A stretch of DNA of 64,000 nt from Phallusia mammillata (GCA_965637545.1 OZ281494.1:7812001-7876000), one strand, 5' to 3'. Shown: positions 2,811 to 9,204, counted from the stretch's first letter. The notes: a model not told the origin generated them from the letters alone. Numbers and translations are program-made.

Positions 2811-3546
2811 TTAGTCAAGATCATATCCCATAAAGTGAAACATAGAGGAATTGAAGAGATTTCCTTGCAGATTGATGTTATCCATTCCACCAAGTTGGCT
2901 TGGTAGAACTGATTCGAAGCTCATAAAACGGAAAGATGTGATCAAATTTTTAATATCTGGATTGCTCCTTTCAATGCAAACAATCACTCGTTTGACTGAT
3001 AATGATTCCTCAGCATAATCCAACAACTCAATAAAGCTATCCTTGGACAGATCTAGTGGTACACGGACAAACAATTGATCTTGAAGCTGTACCTAAAAAA
3101 GTTGTGTTTTATGATAGGTTCCCTTTACAATATATTTAATGATACAAATTCTATACATACTGTATCATAAGATATAATGGTGTGTTCTGCTTTTTGGCGA
3201 AGGAAGGTTTTAAGCTGAATATCTTGACAGTTTTTTGTGACCGACATACACTCTTTGGACAACACATCACAAGCAAACTTCACAGACTCTGAGGCTCCAT
3301 TTCTCACATACACCCTGTACAACAAAAACAACCCAGTATAAGTCAGTTGGTCTTAAAGGGTTGAGCGCATTAACTTACTTATTAGGGACGTCAGGAGCAC
3401 TGCCGAGGCCCTGCGGCCAGTTTGAAGTTACAGTGGAAAACTGTTGAAAGAGGCATGGAGGAGGAAAGAATGGTGAAGTAGCCTTCTTTTTCCTCTTTTT
3501 CTTCATGTTGATTGACTGAATTGGACACAAAATTCTCTGTATGCAT
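2811..3546 (-). CDS. OAZ: Ornithine decarboxylase antizyme: ORF1 3546-3391 (51 aa, ends GPRQCS-UGA), +1 frameshift into ORF2 (3392-3379, 3314-3161, 3092-2811)
   Basis: TGC TCC TGA site; ORF1 has EKEG, SMPL and GPRxCS like vertebrate OAZ1; ORF2 has SKDSFIELLDYAEESL..VIVCIERSNPD..LITSFRFMSFE; introns of 64 and 68 nt keep the +1 frame. Confidence 0.92.
3391..3396 (-). promoter_or_regulatory. Programmed +1 ribosomal frameshift site UCC-UGA
   Basis: Minus strand CCT CGG CAG TGC TCC TGA C; antizyme homology continues only in the +1 frame. Confidence 0.9.
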
Positions 3547-4114
3547 GACAATTTAACAACAGCTTTTGTATGTCTTATGCTCACTGAAAAACTTCAACAG
3601 AAAGAAATTTTAGTAGTGAAAAAAGGCAAGAATGTATTTTTCATGTAAAAAATCACAGGCATATGTTTTACAGTTGTATATATTCATTAAAACCTTGGTC
3701 ATAAATGGCAAAGTAAGCAACTGGCAACACATTGTCTTCTCTTCAACATATTTTCAAACCATTAAAAACAGCACAACTAAAAAATAATTGCACCGAAATG
3801 TCCATTGCCCATCTGTGTACAAACCCTTGTCATACATTGGTAAAGTAAAATAAGACACTGTATACATACAACCAATACTTGGGAATAATTATACAAGAAA
3901 CTTCTCTATTTTGCTGTTTAAATCAATTCAAGTTTGTGTTTAAATCAATGCAAGTTTAGCAGCCTTGATATAATCAAACACAAGACTTTACCAATGCTTT
4001 CAGACTTTTTGGGAAAAAGCACTGCACAACAACATAATTAGTTTCATTCAATGGCCTAAGCAGACACATAGAAATAGTCAAAATTTTGTACATTTAATTT
4101 TTGAATCCAGTTTC

Positions 4115-4531
4115 TAGTGATGGGAAGGGTACCCGGTATCGAACGATTTCAGTGGTATCGATACTCGTACTCTGTATCATATTTTGTCTCAGTTTTCAAT
4201 ACCAACGTGCGAGTACCGAAGGTCCATTTACACCATAAGAATACGGGCAACTATATGCCAATATTTGCTTCGGGCAGCACAATATTGGAAAAAAGTTCCG
4301 CCAGGTTACATATTTTTTTTCCGCTATCGTATGGAGATTACTTTTTTCTGCATGTGTGTGTGTACACGCCTGTACCCCGACCATGGCAGATAAATTAGCC
4401 AGTGCTATACAACTAAGTACAACACTGTACTTAAGTACTCGGTAACCGTACTCGGTATCGAAGGTATATACATGTGGTACTCGTACTCGGTATCAGTACT
4501 CGCTTCAAAACCTGGTATCGTCCCATCACTA
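4115..4531. mobile_element. hAT-type MITE, TIR TAGTGATGGGA, upstream of/intronic to antizyme
   Basis: TIRs tagtgatggga/tcccatcacta; perfect 8-bp TSD ccagtttc; same family as 16744-17137. Confidence 0.9.
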
Positions 4532-5434
4532 CCAGTTTCCCTTCTTGAAAATGTATAAAAAACAAGTAATGATGACTTCATGAAATACAACACTACCCAT
4601 GCACATGCCTTAAAACACTTAATTCATTGTTTTTGAACAGTATAAATATTTGTAATGCACTGAACCCACACTGAATGTACAGAATTTAAATTTCAGGAGT
4701 CAGCATTACTACTGAAAGTTAGACCCTATACAAATCAGCAACCTGGTTTATGCTGTAGTATATGACAACCAAATGTGACTATCAGCTTCAAACCTTAGAA
4801 AGTTAAGCAAGCAGGAACAGTTTAAACAAGCGTTCGAGCATTAATAATCGCAAATTTAAGAATAAAACTAGACAATGAGTTTTAAATTGTGCTCCGGGAG
4901 CAATATGAAATGCTATGCATGCATTATAAGGTAAGGTTTTAATACCTATACATTTTCTACAGGTTATGTTATTTCCCACAAAAAAAGTTAAGTTTGTTAC
5001 TAAAAAATCAAAAATGGTCTGAGGTTACACTTTCTGATAATTTAAGAAGCAAAATATACATCTTTTGCAATTTCATTAGTCTTATAATTTTATTTTACTT
5101 GACATTAGTGCTATTGTCACTATGCTTTCTTTCACCAAGCAAAAAAAACTCTAATCGATTACAGAAATATGCGTTCAATGTTGCCTTATATATTTCATAA
5201 TTCAGACAATAATGAAACAAATAATTGTTATAATACGCTTAAGCCTGATATAATAACATATATTGCGAAACACAATCAGTATGAGCGAAACCAAATAAAG
5301 AAATGTATTAGATATATTGCATTGTAATAGCATGTAACCCAACGTATTAAAACAAGCACTGATAAGTAGGAGGTTAAACAAATACTACACAAAAGTTCAA
5401 ACAAAGCCATTTTATGACCGATTTTCAAACATAC

Positions 5435-5486
5435 CAAGTCGCAGCAACATGCTGCAAGACACCATTACATCGAGTTGCAGATACAT
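5435..5486 (-). other. Candidate upstream antizyme exon (coding part MYLQLDVMVSCSMLLRL)
   Basis: Strong donor G|GTATGT at 5434, matching acceptor TTTTTCAG at 3584; three in-frame AUGs at 5486, 5465, 5450; splice not demonstrated. Confidence 0.4.
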
Positions 5487-5649
5487 CTCCTTCGGCAGAA
5501 TTTTGCTTTCGCAATAAAATTGCTTCGCGAGTCGCGACCTTTTTTCTTTGTGACCAAACAAACAAGTGTACTGTATCTCAACTCAGCCGTAGAAATACAA
5601 CACAGTAATTGGAAATCACAATGGAACTTCACGAACAAAGTTACCGACA

Positions 5650-6140: not shown

Positions 6141-6165
6141 TTTGTCAGATTTGTGTAATAAAAAT

Positions 6166-6783
6166 ATGGCTAACTATGGTATGTATGCCATAGTTGGCAT
6201 TCTTGCCATCATGATAACTTGGAGGGACCTGTCAGGAAACACAGAAGTTGATGCGAAAATGGATAATGATGATTCTCCTGTTCCAAAGCTTAAAAGTCAA
6301 TTCACTGTTCCTGTTGTAAAATTCCTCATTTGTCAATCCTGAGGTTACAAGCGGGCCTTTGAGGAATACGCTCACATCATTCAGCAGCGTTACTCAGGGG
6401 TCAAGATCGACGGGGGTAACTACCCACCTCCTCAGATCAACCAAGCCATTGCTTCATTTTTGTCTCTTGCGAAATTTATTTTAATTGGTTGTATTTTGAC
6501 TGGAGTAAATCCATTCGAACGATTTGGATTGGACACCCCTCAGATCTATATTTGGTGTCGTGAAAATATGATATATGCCTGTTTTATGCTGTTTTTCCTT
6601 ACCAATGCCATAGAAACTCAACTTACATCAACTGGTGCATTTGAAATATCATTGAACGATGTCACCATTTGGTCAAAGCTTCAATCTGGAAGAGTTCCAA
6701 GAGTAGATGAACTGATGCAGATCATTGACTCTCACATCAGTGGTGGAAATATCAATGCCAACGAGCAGTTCAAAGTGCAATAA
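6166..6783 (+). CDS. SELENOT: Selenoprotein T, intronless, 205 aa, Sec UGA at 6340-6342
   Basis: The two ORF-track pieces are one frame separated only by TGA: FLICQS-U-GYKRAFEEY (CxxU), YPPP, hydrophobic middle, AFEISLNDVTIWSKLQSGRVP. Confidence 0.95.
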
Positions 6784-7204
6784 ACCTTTCCTCAACTTTT
6801 ACATTCATTTAGTGGTGTTGCGTTTTTGGTATTACGTTTGTGGTACCTTGGTTACACATTTTCATTTCACCTTTAGGAGTTCAATTTTTCATGGTGTTTG
6901 GTTTGTTACACCAGGTTTCACTGTCTTGACAAAACAGACTGTATACACAAAGTTAGTTTTTGAAACAATTTATGCTTAAACTTATTTATGTTTTGTGTTA
7001 AAACTCTGCAGCTGGCCGTGTTGACGAAACCCATTTAAAAAGCATAAAAAGGCTAAGTGTACTTTTTAAAGATGTGATGTACAGTAATTGTAATGAAGTT
7101 TTTTTGCAATGCACAACTTTTTGTCTATTGATTTGTGCTGGAAGTATTTATTGTATGCTAAGTTAAGTGTTATACATTTTCATTCAATGGATCTGCAGAG
7201 CAAA

Positions 7205-7270
7205 ACTACGATGAAGACATTCTTCAAAAGGCCATGCCAGAAAATGTCTGATATGTTCATTTCGGGTAGT
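7205..7270 (+). promoter_or_regulatory. SECIS element (type II) in SELENOT 3' UTR
   Basis: ATGAA 7211 / TGAT 7249 core; helix GACATT/AATGTC; AAAA at 7226; mini-stem GGC-CAT-GCC; lower helix ACTAC/GTAGT. Confidence 0.85.
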
Positions 7271-7383
7271 AATGGACAAGTTTTTTTTCTGTATTTACTA
7301 TTGTTTGCGTGCATAACATCTGTCTTGCAATGATCATTAGTAATTTATCATTGGTGTTTTGATGCATTTTGTGGTTGGATCAG

Positions 7384-7430
7384 AATAAATGACTAGTTTA
7401 ATGAAGCATTAATGTGTGTTTTATCAATAG
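7384..7430 (+). promoter_or_regulatory. AATAAA poly(A) signal followed by a splice acceptor AG (7429-7430) for EXOSC4
   Basis: AATAAA 7384-7389; tgtgtgttttatcaatAG; ATG 50 nt downstream. Confidence 0.55.
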
Positions 7431-7479
7431 GGTCTCTGCCTACAATGTTGTTTGTTTTGTAACCTACACAAAAACTACA

Positions 7480-9204
7480 ATGGCTGGCCTGGAACTAATT
7501 TCTGATCAAGGTTATCGAATTGACGGAAGGAAACCCACTGAGCTTCGACAAATTCGATGTCGTTTAGGAGTTTTTACACAAGCAGATGGTTCCTCTTATG
7601 TTGAACAAGGCAACACAAAGGTCCGTTTTTTTAAATTGGCAATTTGTTGGTTTTAATACTTTTGAGTGGTTAGAACTAAGGGGTTTGGTTTTTATTTAGT
7701 TTTATAATGAAGTATACTTTTTAGGTGCTAGCATCTATATATGGACCACATGAGCCTTCATCAAATATGAGAAGCAAGGTTTGAGGCTACATCCATATTG
7801 TTCTCCTAAACTTGTTTTAAGCTCAACTGTCAAAAATGATGTCATTCGACCACCTTTTCTAAATGTTTCAGTATAAAAGAAGCTTACCTCTTACAGATTT
7901 CACATGACAAGTGCATTATCAATTGTGAATACAGTCAAGCCTCCTTCAGTTCTGCTGAAAGAAAACACCGTCCTCGCGGGGATAGGAAAAGCCTCGATAT
8001 GGCTGCACACATAAAACAAACATTTGAATCATGCATTCATACTACGTTGTATCCAAGGTTTGTGTAATTTGCAATAAAATAATTCAATAAAAATATATTT
8101 TATTGTGAAAATTTTCTCCCATTTGCAATTTCAAAGTTTAAACAGGTTTACCTTTGAATACTTGTGAAGTTCCTACACTTATAGTCTTGTCTGTATTCTT
8201 TACAAGTTATTTACCAAATTTCATGCCCAGTATTTTAATTGTAAACATTTTTCTGAATGTGGCAAATTTAAATCATGAAACTTCTAACCACTTCTAATTG
8301 GTAGTTGATTGGTCAGTGATGCCAATTAAAGTTGATTTTGCATTTCAGATCCCAAATTGACATATTTTTGCAAATCCTCCAATCAGATGGAAGCAATTAC
8401 TGTGCTTGTGTTAATGCTGCTACCCTTGCAATTGTCGATGCTGGGATTGCAATGAAGGCAAGATATTCATCAGCTGCACCTTTTTAAAAAAAAATTATTG
8501 CAAAAAATATTTTTTGTGTGATGTTCTTTACATTTGTATTGTTGTAATCGTAAATTCTTTTTCTAGGATTATGTTTGTGCTTGTTCAGCGAGCTTAGCCA
8601 AAGGAACAACTCTAGTTGATATCAATCATGTTGAAGAATCCGCTGGGTGTGCTGAATTGTCAGCTGCTGTTATGCCTAAGTTAAACAAGATTGTTTATTC
8701 TGAACTTAATGGAAGGTAATACCATTGTATTAAGTAATAATTGCTGGATCTATACAATTATGTCCCACCAAAATGACACTTAATTTGGGAATTAAAATCG
8801 TTCTGTGAGTAATCAATGAAGCACACTTTTATTCCGACTATTTCTTTTCCCATATTTAATTAAGTTTTGTTATTGCCACTCTGAGTTTAATTTATTTCGC
8901 TAAGTGAAAGAAATGGTAGCAACAAGTTGCACTACAACAGTAAATAAATGAAACTAAAGTTTTAACTTCTGACTCTTAAACTACGATGCATTTTTTTAAG
9001 TGAAAAAAACTTTTTTACCATTAAGTGACATTGTCAAAAAAGGCTCCATTATAAAGGTACCATTTTTGTTGCAGGTTGCATGAAGATGAAATTGGAAAAG
9101 TTCTAGACTCTGTTGTACTGGGTTGCAATGATATGTTTGCAGTAATGGAAAGGACAGTTCGTGAACATGTTGAAGAAACTGTTTCAAACTTTACCCACTC
9201 ATAA
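7480..9204 (+). CDS. EXOSC4: Exosome component RRP41; exons 7480-7620, 7725-7778, 7897-8057, 8349-8457, 8567-8715, 9075-9204
   Basis: MAGLELISDQGYRIDGRKPTELR, GSSYVEQGNTKV, YPRSQIDIFLQILQSDGS, DAGIAMKDYVCACSA; exon phases consistent. Confidence 0.93.

What the first reader, a model, noticed from the sequence alone, without database searches (positions are those of the whole stretch)
3379..3583. Antizyme +1 frame is open across the whole exon and has its own AUG (MKKKRKKK)
Seen: the ORF2 frame has no stop from 3583 to the shift site, overlapping all of ORF1. It contains an AUG at 3506 (A at -3), 40 nt after the ORF1 AUG, beginning a basic NLS-like MKKKRKKK. Established: antizyme ORF2 normally has no usable start and needs polyamine-induced +1 frameshifting. 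Inference: leaky scanning could produce a polyamine-independent, possibly nuclear antizyme from a dual-coding exon.
Basis: partly seen in the sequence, partly recalled or inferred. Interest (0 to 1): 0.7.

Follow-up and report, generated by a model that had tools for sequence, protein, structure and literature searches.

The report
Conserved second start codon in antizyme
In this sea-squirt gene for antizyme, the brake on polyamine synthesis that normally needs a ribosomal frameshift, a second start codon in the shifted frame is conserved across sea squirts, echinoderms and acorn worms, so these animals probably also make a frameshift-free antizyme with a nuclear-import-like tag.

Summary
The window (Phallusia mammillata) carries a three-exon ornithine decarboxylase antizyme gene on the minus strand. 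ORF1 starts at AUG 3546 and ends at the UCC-UGA shift site (3396-3391). The +1 (ORF2) frame is open from 3593 and has an AUG at 3506 with A at -3, encoding MKKKRKKK. Transcript contigs from four studies confirm the exons and show no indel.

In this one sequence the open frame is not significant: 31% of codon shuffles give it. Comparison changes the picture. Nine tunicate lineages seen as DNA, one starfish, and the database proteins of Ciona, nine echinoderms and hemichordates all begin at this AUG, followed by a K/R run. The frame stays open to the shift site in every one.

Within the run, changes are silent in ORF2 but swap E and K in ORF1. ORF1-silent sites are almost fixed. The starfish keeps the basic run with CGT and CGC codons where the ORF1 motif has decayed. 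About 17 protostome transcripts have the purine tract but no AUG at its head.

Best reading (about 0.55): leaky scanning to a selected second AUG gives a frameshift-independent, NLS-like antizyme proteoform. Translation from it is untested. I found no published description.

The parts
3379..3591 (-). Antizyme exon 1: 5' UTR, ORF1, the overlapping ORF2-frame stretch and the shift site
   Evidence: Contigs of 4 runs cover 3378-3590/3594 (one to 3611) and join 3379 to 3314. Sequence.
3592..3593 (-). Probable spliced-leader trans-splice acceptor (AG after a pyrimidine tract)
   Evidence: Contig ends cluster at 3590-3594, and contig X5 carries 20 further unmatched letters. Neighbouring genes show the leader ...ATTCTATTTGAATA at their 5' ends (table 7). 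A relative's antizyme mRNA, L010, starts with ATTCTATTTGAATAAG. The leader on this particular mRNA was not displayed, so this part is inferred.
3391..3546 (-). ORF1: 51 codons plus UGA, MHTENFVSNSVNQHEEKEEKEGYFTILSSSMPL...PRQCS*
   Evidence: ORF1 is homologous to ORF1 of Ciona, other tunicates, a starfish and protostomes. Its AUG context is G at -3 and C at +4.
3504..3506 (-). ORF2-frame AUG (AUG2), the second AUG on the mRNA, with A at -3 and A at +4
   Evidence: Conserved in 9 tunicate DNA lineages and a starfish. It is also the first residue of the database proteins of Ciona, Phallusia, echinoderms and hemichordates.
3483..3503 (-). Purine tract read as KKKRKKK in the ORF2 frame and as EEKEEKE in ORF1
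   Evidence: The tract is also present in protostomes without an AUG at its head.
3379..3482 (-). ORF2-frame linker from the K-run to the exon end: open, but poorly conserved as ORF2 peptide
   Evidence: Substitutions concentrate at ORF1 third positions.
3391..3396 (-). UCC-UGA +1 frameshift site, preceded by the conserved CAGTGC
   Evidence: Invariant at nucleotide level in all tunicate sequences.
3161..3314 (-). Exon 2, ORF2 frame
   Evidence: Splice joints in 4 runs. Identical to residues of P0001.
2811..3092 (-). Coding part of exon 3 with the ODC_AZ domain and stop codon. The 3' UTR continues to about 2475-2050.
   Evidence: Pfam PF02100, E = 1e-11. Contigs.

Best explanation
The Phallusia antizyme mRNA has two routes into the antizyme reading frame.

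Route 1 is the classical one. Ribosomes start at AUG 3546, translate the 51-codon ORF1 and shift +1 at UCC-UGA. The site and the ORF1 stop are conserved to the nucleotide.

Route 2 is a second AUG (3506), 40 nt downstream and in the +1 frame. It has the better -3 base (A, against G at AUG1). Ribosomes that scan past AUG1 can start there and read straight through the shift site as ...GSAPDV.... This yields a full-length antizyme of 187 aa whose N-terminus is MKKKRKK instead of the ORF1 peptide. That tag matches the core of the SV40 T-antigen nuclear import signal (KKKRK; from my own knowledge). The proteoform is therefore probably sorted differently, perhaps to the nucleus, and does not depend on the polyamine-sensing frameshift.

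Shown: the anatomy, the expression of the exon, the conservation of the AUG, the basic run and the open frame across invertebrate deuterostomes, and constraint at ORF1-silent sites.

Inferred: initiation at AUG2 by leaky scanning, polyamine independence, and nuclear targeting.
For: 1. Every relative examined has the feature.
- Nine tunicate lineages were seen as DNA: the window, L013, Ciona L011, L001, L007, L010, L002, L004 and L009. All have AUG2 as the next AUG after the ORF1 AUG(s). All have A at -3 and A at +4, then MKKK[R/K]KK, and a frame open to UCC-UGA 98-113 nt downstream.
- Starfish L014 has the same layout.
- The database proteins of Ciona, Phallusia, Diadema, Amphiura, Patiria, Asterias, Acanthaster, Anneissia, Antedon, Ptychodera and Glandiceps all begin M[KR]K[KR]R[KR]K and read through the shift site.

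2. The constraint is not ORF1's.
- The ORF1 codon that supplies the 'AT' of AUG2 is CAT, TAT, GAT or AAT (H, Y, D or N). It is never NAC.
- In the K-run, 4 of the 5 variable sites are ORF2 third positions. These changes are E<->K charge swaps in ORF1. The chance of that distribution is p = 0.02.
- The ORF1-silent sites keep the pattern A,A,A,G,A,A in 8 of 9 lineages, although these genes use GAA and GAG about equally.
- Resampling synonymous ORF1 codons keeps the ATG together with an open frame in only 0.22-0.40 of trials per lineage. The product over 8 lineages is about 4e-5.

3. The starfish keeps the basic run using CGT and CGC codons, while ORF1 there reads HEEETSQRG.

4. Contrast group. 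In a sample of metatranscriptome contigs not filtered by ORF calling, about 17 protostome transcripts carry the same purine tract. None has an AUG at its head, and most have no ORF2-frame AUG at all.

5. No conserved RNA structure covers the tract.

6. The exon is expressed, and no indel is seen in 4 studies.
Against: - There is no direct evidence of initiation at AUG2. Only assembled contigs were available, with no ribosome profiling and no peptides.
- AUG1 has a purine at -3, and two lineages have two upstream ORF1 AUGs, so leakage may be small.
- The purine tract and ORF1's E/K motif are bilaterian-wide. They give a K/R run in the +1 frame automatically, even where no AUG exists.
- The linker between the K-run and the shift site shows no ORF2-frame constraint.
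- Open +1 frames are common given ORF1 codon content.
- Lineages are related, so the product of probabilities overstates independence.
- A constitutive antizyme would blunt the polyamine feedback unless it is kept apart from the cytosolic pool.
Confidence: 0.55

Rival explanations
1. By-product. AUG2, the K-run and the open frame are side effects of an ancient ORF1 motif (..ENF..[HY]EEKEE..MP..) or of a purine-rich RNA element. AUG2 is reached too rarely to matter, and the database proteins starting at MKKKRKK are annotation artefacts of pipelines that pick the longest ORF.
For: - The ORF1 motif and the purine tract occur across Bilateria, and the +1 reading is K/R-rich even without an AUG.
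- In the single-sequence shuffle the +1 frame is open in 31% of trials.
- The linker evolves under ORF1 constraint only.
- Ivanov & Atkins describe frequent mis-annotation of antizymes.
- AUG1 has a purine at -3.
Against: - This reading does not explain why the silent T of NAT is fixed while the amino acid varies among H, Y, D and N.
- It does not explain why ORF1-silent sites in the run are fixed while ORF1 tolerates E<->K swaps.
- It does not explain why the starfish preserves basic residues with CGY codons after the ORF1 motif has decayed.
- It does not explain why protostomes with the tract lack the AUG while every invertebrate deuterostome has it.
Confidence: 0.27
2. Regulatory start-site choice. 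AUG2 is used, but its role is quantitative control. ORF1 acts as an overlapping upstream ORF that limits access to AUG2. The split between AUG1 and AUG2 (for example polyamine-sensitive initiation, or queuing behind ribosomes paused at the shift site) adds a second layer of regulation. The basic tag would be secondary.
For: - Polyamine-responsive start selection and uORF control are common in this pathway (PMC2811004).
- The AUG1 context G..AUGC is conserved and suboptimal in 8 of 9 tunicates.
- The distance from AUG2 to the UGA is 110 nt in five lineages.
Against: - The spacing is not constant: 98, 104 and 113 nt in other tunicates and 137 nt in the starfish.
- The basic run itself is under ORF2-frame constraint, which a pure start-site switch does not need.
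- There are no data on polyamine response.
Confidence: 0.15
3. Artefact. An assembly indel or a pseudogene makes the +1 frame look open.
For: None found.
Against: - Spliced contigs from 4 independent studies match exon 1 base for base.
- UniProt A0A6F9DNJ1 has the same protein.
- The layout recurs in many species.
Confidence: 0.01

Closest known systems
Canonical metazoan antizyme (for example mammalian OAZ1): ORF1, then a polyamine-stimulated +1 shift at UCC-UGA into ORF2
   Same: Same family (Pfam ODC_AZ). Same two overlapping ORFs and the same UCC-UGA site, with conserved upstream nucleotides. ORF1 is homologous.
   Different: [quoted passage not shown] Here a conserved AUG sits in the ORF2 frame inside ORF1, with nothing between it and the antizyme body.
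Two in-frame ORF1 AUGs of vertebrate antizyme 1, giving mitochondrial and cytosolic isoforms by context-dependent leaky scanning (PMC1874602, section on alternative start codons)
   Same: Alternative N-termini with different targeting from one antizyme mRNA, through leaky scanning. The homologous second ORF1 AUG (MPL) is also present here, at 3456.
   Different: Those AUGs are both in the ORF1 frame, so both products still need the frameshift. AUG 3506 is in the ORF2 frame and bypasses it.
Tetrahymena thermophila antizyme, and possibly Capsaspora, with no ORF1 and so no frameshift (PMC1874602)
   Same: Antizyme that can be made without frameshifting.
   Different: There the frameshift arrangement is absent. 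Here it is fully retained, and the frameshift-free route is an addition to it.
Cellular and viral dual- or triple-coding by initiation at nearby AUGs in different frames (for example human SRD5A1, PMC13352861)
   Same: Closely spaced AUGs in different frames on one mRNA, with overlapping reading frames.
   Different: In those cases the frames give unrelated proteins. Here the second frame merges into the same protein body that the first frame reaches by frameshifting.

Membership tests
Ornithine decarboxylase antizyme (ODC_AZ, PF02100) | C-terminal ODC_AZ domain | tested here: met
   Exon 3 translation hits PF02100 at E = 1e-11, 45 bits against a cut-off of 24. Homologues are named antizymes.
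Ornithine decarboxylase antizyme (ODC_AZ, PF02100) | A short ORF1 ending in a stop at a shift-prone codon (UCC-UGA), with ORF2 in the +1 frame | tested here: met
   TCC TGA at 3396-3391. The +1 frame continues through exons 2 and 3.
Ornithine decarboxylase antizyme (ODC_AZ, PF02100) | Polyamine-stimulated +1 frameshifting, and ODC binding and degradation | not testable with these tools
   Inferred from nucleotide-level conservation of the site.
Canonical rule: ORF2 has no start of its own | No AUG in the ORF2 frame upstream of the shift site that scanning ribosomes could reach | tested here: not met
   AUG 3506 is the second AUG of the mRNA and has A at -3. The rule does hold for most protostome transcripts sampled.
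Leaky-scanning dual start (alternative-frame initiation) | The second AUG is the next AUG downstream, and the first AUG is in a less than optimal context | tested here: inconclusive
   There is no intervening AUG in any of 10 sequences. AUG1 has G at -3 and C at +4, which is adequate but not weak. AUG2 has A at -3.
Leaky-scanning dual start (alternative-frame initiation) | Purifying selection detectable in the second frame | tested here: met
   Met for the AUG and the K/R run. Not met for the linker, where only ORF1 constraint is seen.
Leaky-scanning dual start (alternative-frame initiation) | Initiation at the second AUG observed (footprints, peptides or reporter) | not testable with these tools
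   Only assembled contigs were available.
Classical monopartite nuclear localisation signal | A basic cluster fitting K-K/R-X-K/R | tested here: met
   KKKRKKK at residues 2-8. The motif definition and the SV40 comparison are from my own knowledge.
Classical monopartite nuclear localisation signal | Importin-dependent nuclear import | not testable with these tools
   No data.

The most novel reading that the evidence does not exclude
Antizyme of the ancestral deuterostome had two entries into ORF2: the polyamine-sensing frameshift, and a conserved +1-frame AUG that makes a constitutive antizyme tagged with an SV40-type nuclear import signal. Tunicates, echinoderms and hemichordates keep both. 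Amphioxus has a variant of the arrangement, and vertebrates lost the AUG. The purine tract itself is older, dating to the bilaterian ancestor. If so, the textbook statement that all animal antizymes require frameshifting would need qualifying, and a nuclear, polyamine-independent role of antizyme would become testable in Ciona.
Probability: 0.4. Interest if true: 0.85.

Novelty: new variant of a known kind. Interest (0 to 1): 0.72.

Why it matters
Antizyme is the classic case of regulatory frameshifting in cellular genes. The standard view is that ORF2 can be reached only through ORF1, which is what makes the frameshift both the sensor and the effector of polyamine homeostasis.

A start codon in the ORF2 frame that is conserved across tunicates, echinoderms and hemichordates would mean that a whole branch of animals also makes antizyme without the sensor. 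That product would carry a different and probably differently targeted N-terminus.

This bears on three points:
- how tight the feedback loop is;
- whether antizyme has nuclear functions;
- how RefSeq and UniProt models that start at MKKKRKK should be annotated. They are currently neither flagged as slippage products nor recognised as an alternative proteoform.

The question can be tested directly by electroporating reporters into Ciona or Phallusia embryos.

Tried and rejected
- The word-index protein search with exon 3 found nothing, because the full proteins lie outside its length window. The HMMER search of the representative library was used instead.
- DNA for P0005 and P0007 is not on record. 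Ciona DNA was obtained through cluster member P0094.
- The genome contig L012 (P0002) shows no exon 1 within 4 kb upstream, so it gave no information.
- P0090 and P0091 start at a later Met and looked like counter-examples. L007 shows MKKKRKK in frame upstream, so the gene caller had simply cut the ORF. L008 is truncated at its 5' end.
- P0012 (a Tara Oceans transcript) lacks both the tag and the SAPDV motif, and its DNA was not obtainable. It remains unexplained.
- A single-sequence shuffle test of the open frame was not significant.
- I considered that the 110-nt distance from AUG2 to the UGA reflects ribosome queuing. It is not constant (98-137 nt), so I did not pursue it.
- I looked for a conserved RNA structure over the purine tract and found none, with 0 predicted pairs. 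A Phallusia-only hairpin exists.
- The supplementary alignments of Ivanov & Atkins 2007 are not held.
- Literature searches for a prior description found none. The library is incomplete, so this is not proof of novelty.
- Only one ambulacrarian was seen as DNA (L014).

Full report
WHAT IS THERE

The stretch lies in exon 1 of a minus-strand ornithine decarboxylase antizyme gene. Exon 3 carries the ODC_AZ domain (Pfam PF02100, E = 1e-11).

ORF1 starts at AUG 3546 and runs for 51 codons. It ends in ...CAG TGC TCC TGA at 3402-3391, which is the classical UCC-UGA +1 shift site.

The +1 (ORF2) frame is closed by a TGA at 3596-3594 and is then open from 3593 to the exon end at 3379. It contains one ATG, at 3506. 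That is 40 nt after the ORF1 AUG, with A at -3 and A at +4, and it begins MKKKRKKKATSP....

Assembled transcript contigs from four runs of four different studies confirm the two short introns, 3378-3315 and 3160-3093, with GT..AG ends. They match exon 1 without any base change or indel.

The contigs run to 3590-3594, and one reaches 3611. Two neighbouring plus-strand genes show the ascidian spliced leader (...ATTCTATTTGAATA) at their 5' ends (table 7). The AG at 3593-3592 is the likely trans-splice acceptor for antizyme. One contig has 20 unmatched letters beyond 3594, but the tool did not print them, so this step is inferred.

Between 3611 and the shift site the only ATGs are 3546 (ORF1), 3506 (ORF2 frame) and 3456 (ORF1 frame). 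AUG 3506 is therefore the second AUG on the mRNA.

The organism is Phallusia mammillata. The protein that starts at AUG 3506 and runs through the three exons is identical to UniProt A0A6F9DNJ1, 187 aa (P0001).

IS IT MORE THAN CHANCE IN THIS ONE SEQUENCE?

No. Shuffling the ORF1 codons leaves the +1 frame open in 31% of trials, and open with an ATG in 25%. The basic run is the automatic +1 reading of ORF1's E/K-rich HEEKEEKE. Any run of GAR and AAR codons reads as AAR or AGR one base later.

RELATIVES

An HMMER search of the 1.84-billion-protein representative library with exon 3 (given by reference) returned P0001. It also returned five other cluster representatives, each 43-47% identical to the exon-3 query, that begin MKKKRKK (or MGKKKRKK) and read through ..SAPDV... 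That motif is the shift site read in the ORF2 frame.

One of these is the Ciona intestinalis RefSeq and UniProt antizyme (XP_026691049, F6UKH7).

I fetched DNA for nine tunicate lineages:
- the window itself;
- a closer relative's genome contig, L013;
- Ciona, L011, where the gene is intronless;
- six transcript lineages from marine metatranscriptomes: L001, L007, L010, L002, L004 and L009.
One of the transcripts, L010, still carries the spliced leader at its 5' end.

All nine share the following layout:
- an ORF1 with its AUG 31-61 nt upstream of AUG2; eight of the nine have G at -3 and C at +4;
- no other AUG between the two;
- AUG2 with A at -3 and A at +4;
- MKKK[R/K]KK;
- an ORF2 frame open down to an invariant CAGTGCTCCTGA-type site 98-113 nt further on.

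Two apparent counter-examples, P0090 and P0091, were a gene-caller truncation and a 5'-truncated contig.

A second profile search showed the same start in other phyla. The RefSeq antizymes of Diadema, Amphiura, Patiria, Asterias, Acanthaster, Anneissia, Antedon, Ptychodera and Glandiceps all begin M[KR]K[KR]RRK in the ORF2 frame and read through ..GIPDV or ..SAPDV. Amphioxus has an internal KKKRKKK with Met codons further upstream.

One starfish sequence seen as DNA, L014, has the same layout: AUG1, then 49 nt, then AUG2 with A at -3.

WHICH FRAME IS CONSTRAINED?

1. The ORF1 codon that supplies the A and T of AUG2 is CAT, TAT, GAT or AAT in the ten DNA sequences. The amino acid varies (H, Y, D, N), but the ORF1-silent T is never C.

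2. In the 18 nt after AUG2, five sites vary among the tunicates.
- Four of them are ORF2 third positions. These changes are silent in ORF2 and are E<->K charge swaps in ORF1.
- The fifth is a K/R exchange in one Ciona assembly.
- The chance of that distribution is p = 0.02.
- The ORF1-silent positions keep the pattern A,A,A,G,A,A in eight of nine lineages, although these genes use GAA and GAG, and AAA and AAG, about equally.

3. I held each ORF1 protein fixed and resampled synonymous codons. The ATG together with an open frame survives in 0.22-0.40 of trials per lineage. The product over eight lineages is about 4e-5. This overstates independence, but silent sites are saturated at these distances.

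4. In the starfish the ORF1 motif has decayed to HEEETSQRG, yet ORF2 still reads MKKRRRK. It uses CGT and CGC arginine codons, which a purine tract cannot explain.

5. The linker between the basic run and the shift site behaves the opposite way.
- Substitutions pile up at ORF1 third positions.
- ORF1 identity exceeds ORF2 identity, for example 25/28 against 17/27.
- The two Ciona proteins P0005 and P0094, which differ by a few residues, show 5 differences in 37 positions there, against 7 in 136 elsewhere.
ORF1 is therefore a real, selected ORF. The ORF2 frame in the linker is merely kept open.

6. No conserved RNA structure covers the tract.

CONTRAST GROUP

A scan of metagenome contigs gave 80 antizyme transcripts chosen by their C-terminal domain, and so not filtered by ORF calling. 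Most are of protostome type.

Their ORF1 is clearly homologous (..ENFGPK..EEKE..MPS..GPGPRWCS*). About 17 carry the same purine tract, which reads RKRKKKK in the +1 frame. None has an AUG at its head, and most have no ORF2-frame AUG at all. Some protostome ORFs in the protein database do have a Met a few codons upstream of the run, at varying positions.

The tract is therefore ancient and by itself says nothing about ORF2-frame translation. The AUG fixed at its head is specific to invertebrate deuterostomes.

INTERPRETATION

The frameshift apparatus is intact and conserved, so route 1 is still used.

The most economical reading of the extra constraint is that AUG2 is a real start codon, reached by leaky scanning. 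It would give a frameshift-independent antizyme with an N-terminal basic tag. The tag matches the SV40-type nuclear import motif (my own knowledge).

Frameshifting is typically inefficient, which is general knowledge and was not measured here. Even a few per cent of leakage could therefore contribute a sizeable share of antizyme. Sorting that share to another compartment would stop it short-circuiting the cytosolic feedback loop.

I put about 0.85 on the AUG and basic run being under selection beyond ORF1. I put about 0.55 on productive initiation at AUG2, and about 0.35-0.4 on nuclear targeting.

The main rival is a by-product of ORF1 or of the purine tract, with negligible initiation at AUG2. 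It keeps about 0.27, because nothing here shows translation. A purely regulatory role for start-site choice gets about 0.15. An assembly artefact is excluded.

WHAT IS KNOWN

Ivanov & Atkins 2007 (PMC1874602) analysed close to 300 antizymes, including C. intestinalis, C. savignyi, Molgula and echinoderms. [quoted passage not shown] The only exceptions they name are Tetrahymena and perhaps Capsaspora.

Their section on alternative start codons deals only with ORF1-frame AUGs. Ivanov et al. 2009 (PMC2811004) say the same.

The 2016 recoding review and the OAF paper do not mention tunicates or an ORF2-frame start. Other full-text searches found nothing.

Public databases already hold the AUG2-initiated proteins as automatic models, but without any interpretation.

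LIMITS

- No typed or joined protein model of the window's gene was used. Searches were made exon by exon, by reference, and then with database proteins.
- Only contigs, not raw reads, were available. Transcript starts, strand and translation therefore could not be observed.

Noticed in passing
window 6147-7430 (+); in-frame TGA at 6340-6342: The neighbouring single-exon gene is a selenoprotein T-like gene. The reading frame runs ...VVKFLICQS-TGA-GYKRAFEEY..., and the ORF continues through the TGA, giving a CxxU motif. A second recoding gene therefore lies 2.6 kb from antizyme. Its 5' end carries the spliced leader.
   Followed up: partly
window 7429-8000 (+): A second gene receives the spliced leader at 7429, exactly where the SelT transcript contigs end (7430). 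This is an operon-like, gap-less arrangement of the kind known from Ciona. Its introns are 7619-7722 and 7777-7894.
   Followed up: no
window 4128-4532: Transcript depth is 10-20 times that of antizyme, with many different loose ends on both sides in all four runs. This looks like a multi-copy transcribed repeat or mobile element, about 0.5 kb upstream of antizyme exon 1.
   Followed up: no
window 5435-5486 (-): The candidate upstream exon of the companion note s1-405532 (a frameshift-free 230-aa antizyme made by cis-splicing) has no support in these data. Depth is 0 at 5401-5600 in all four runs, and no contig joins it to 3591 or 3583.
   Followed up: partly
L011:3971-4522 (Ciona intestinalis) against window 2811-3546: The Ciona antizyme gene is intronless, while Phallusia has two introns of 64 and 68 nt. 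One Ciona assembly reads MKKKKKK where the other reads MKKKRKK. That change is silent in ORF1 (GAG to GAA).
   Followed up: partly
L039 and L040 (protostome metatranscriptome contigs), about 120 nt upstream of the shift site: In these transcripts the conserved ORF1 is cut by a TAA right after ..IENFGP. The first part thus becomes a separate upstream ORF, and ORF1 proper starts at the conserved MPS Met. The purine tract then lies between the two ORFs.
   Followed up: no
window about 3495-3458 (-): In Phallusia only, the purine tract can pair with the downstream pyrimidine tract (ORF1 ..FTILSSS), forming a hairpin that starts 11 nt after AUG2. The whole-exon z-score is -2.4. The pairing is not conserved in other tunicates.
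   Followed up: partly
P0012 (Tara Oceans transcript, 179 aa): This is a group-A-like antizyme ORF that lacks both MKKKRKK and the SAPDV shift-site motif, and has an insertion there. It could be a paralogue, a splice variant or a mis-assembly. Its DNA was not obtainable.
   Followed up: no
RefSeq and UniProt entries: P0001, P0005/P0094, P0030, P0124-P0131, P0139, P0143: The public models for Phallusia, Ciona, amphioxus, echinoderm and hemichordate antizymes are all the ORF2-frame ORF, without a ribosomal-slippage annotation. The ORF1-plus-frameshift product is missing from these records.
   Followed up: partly
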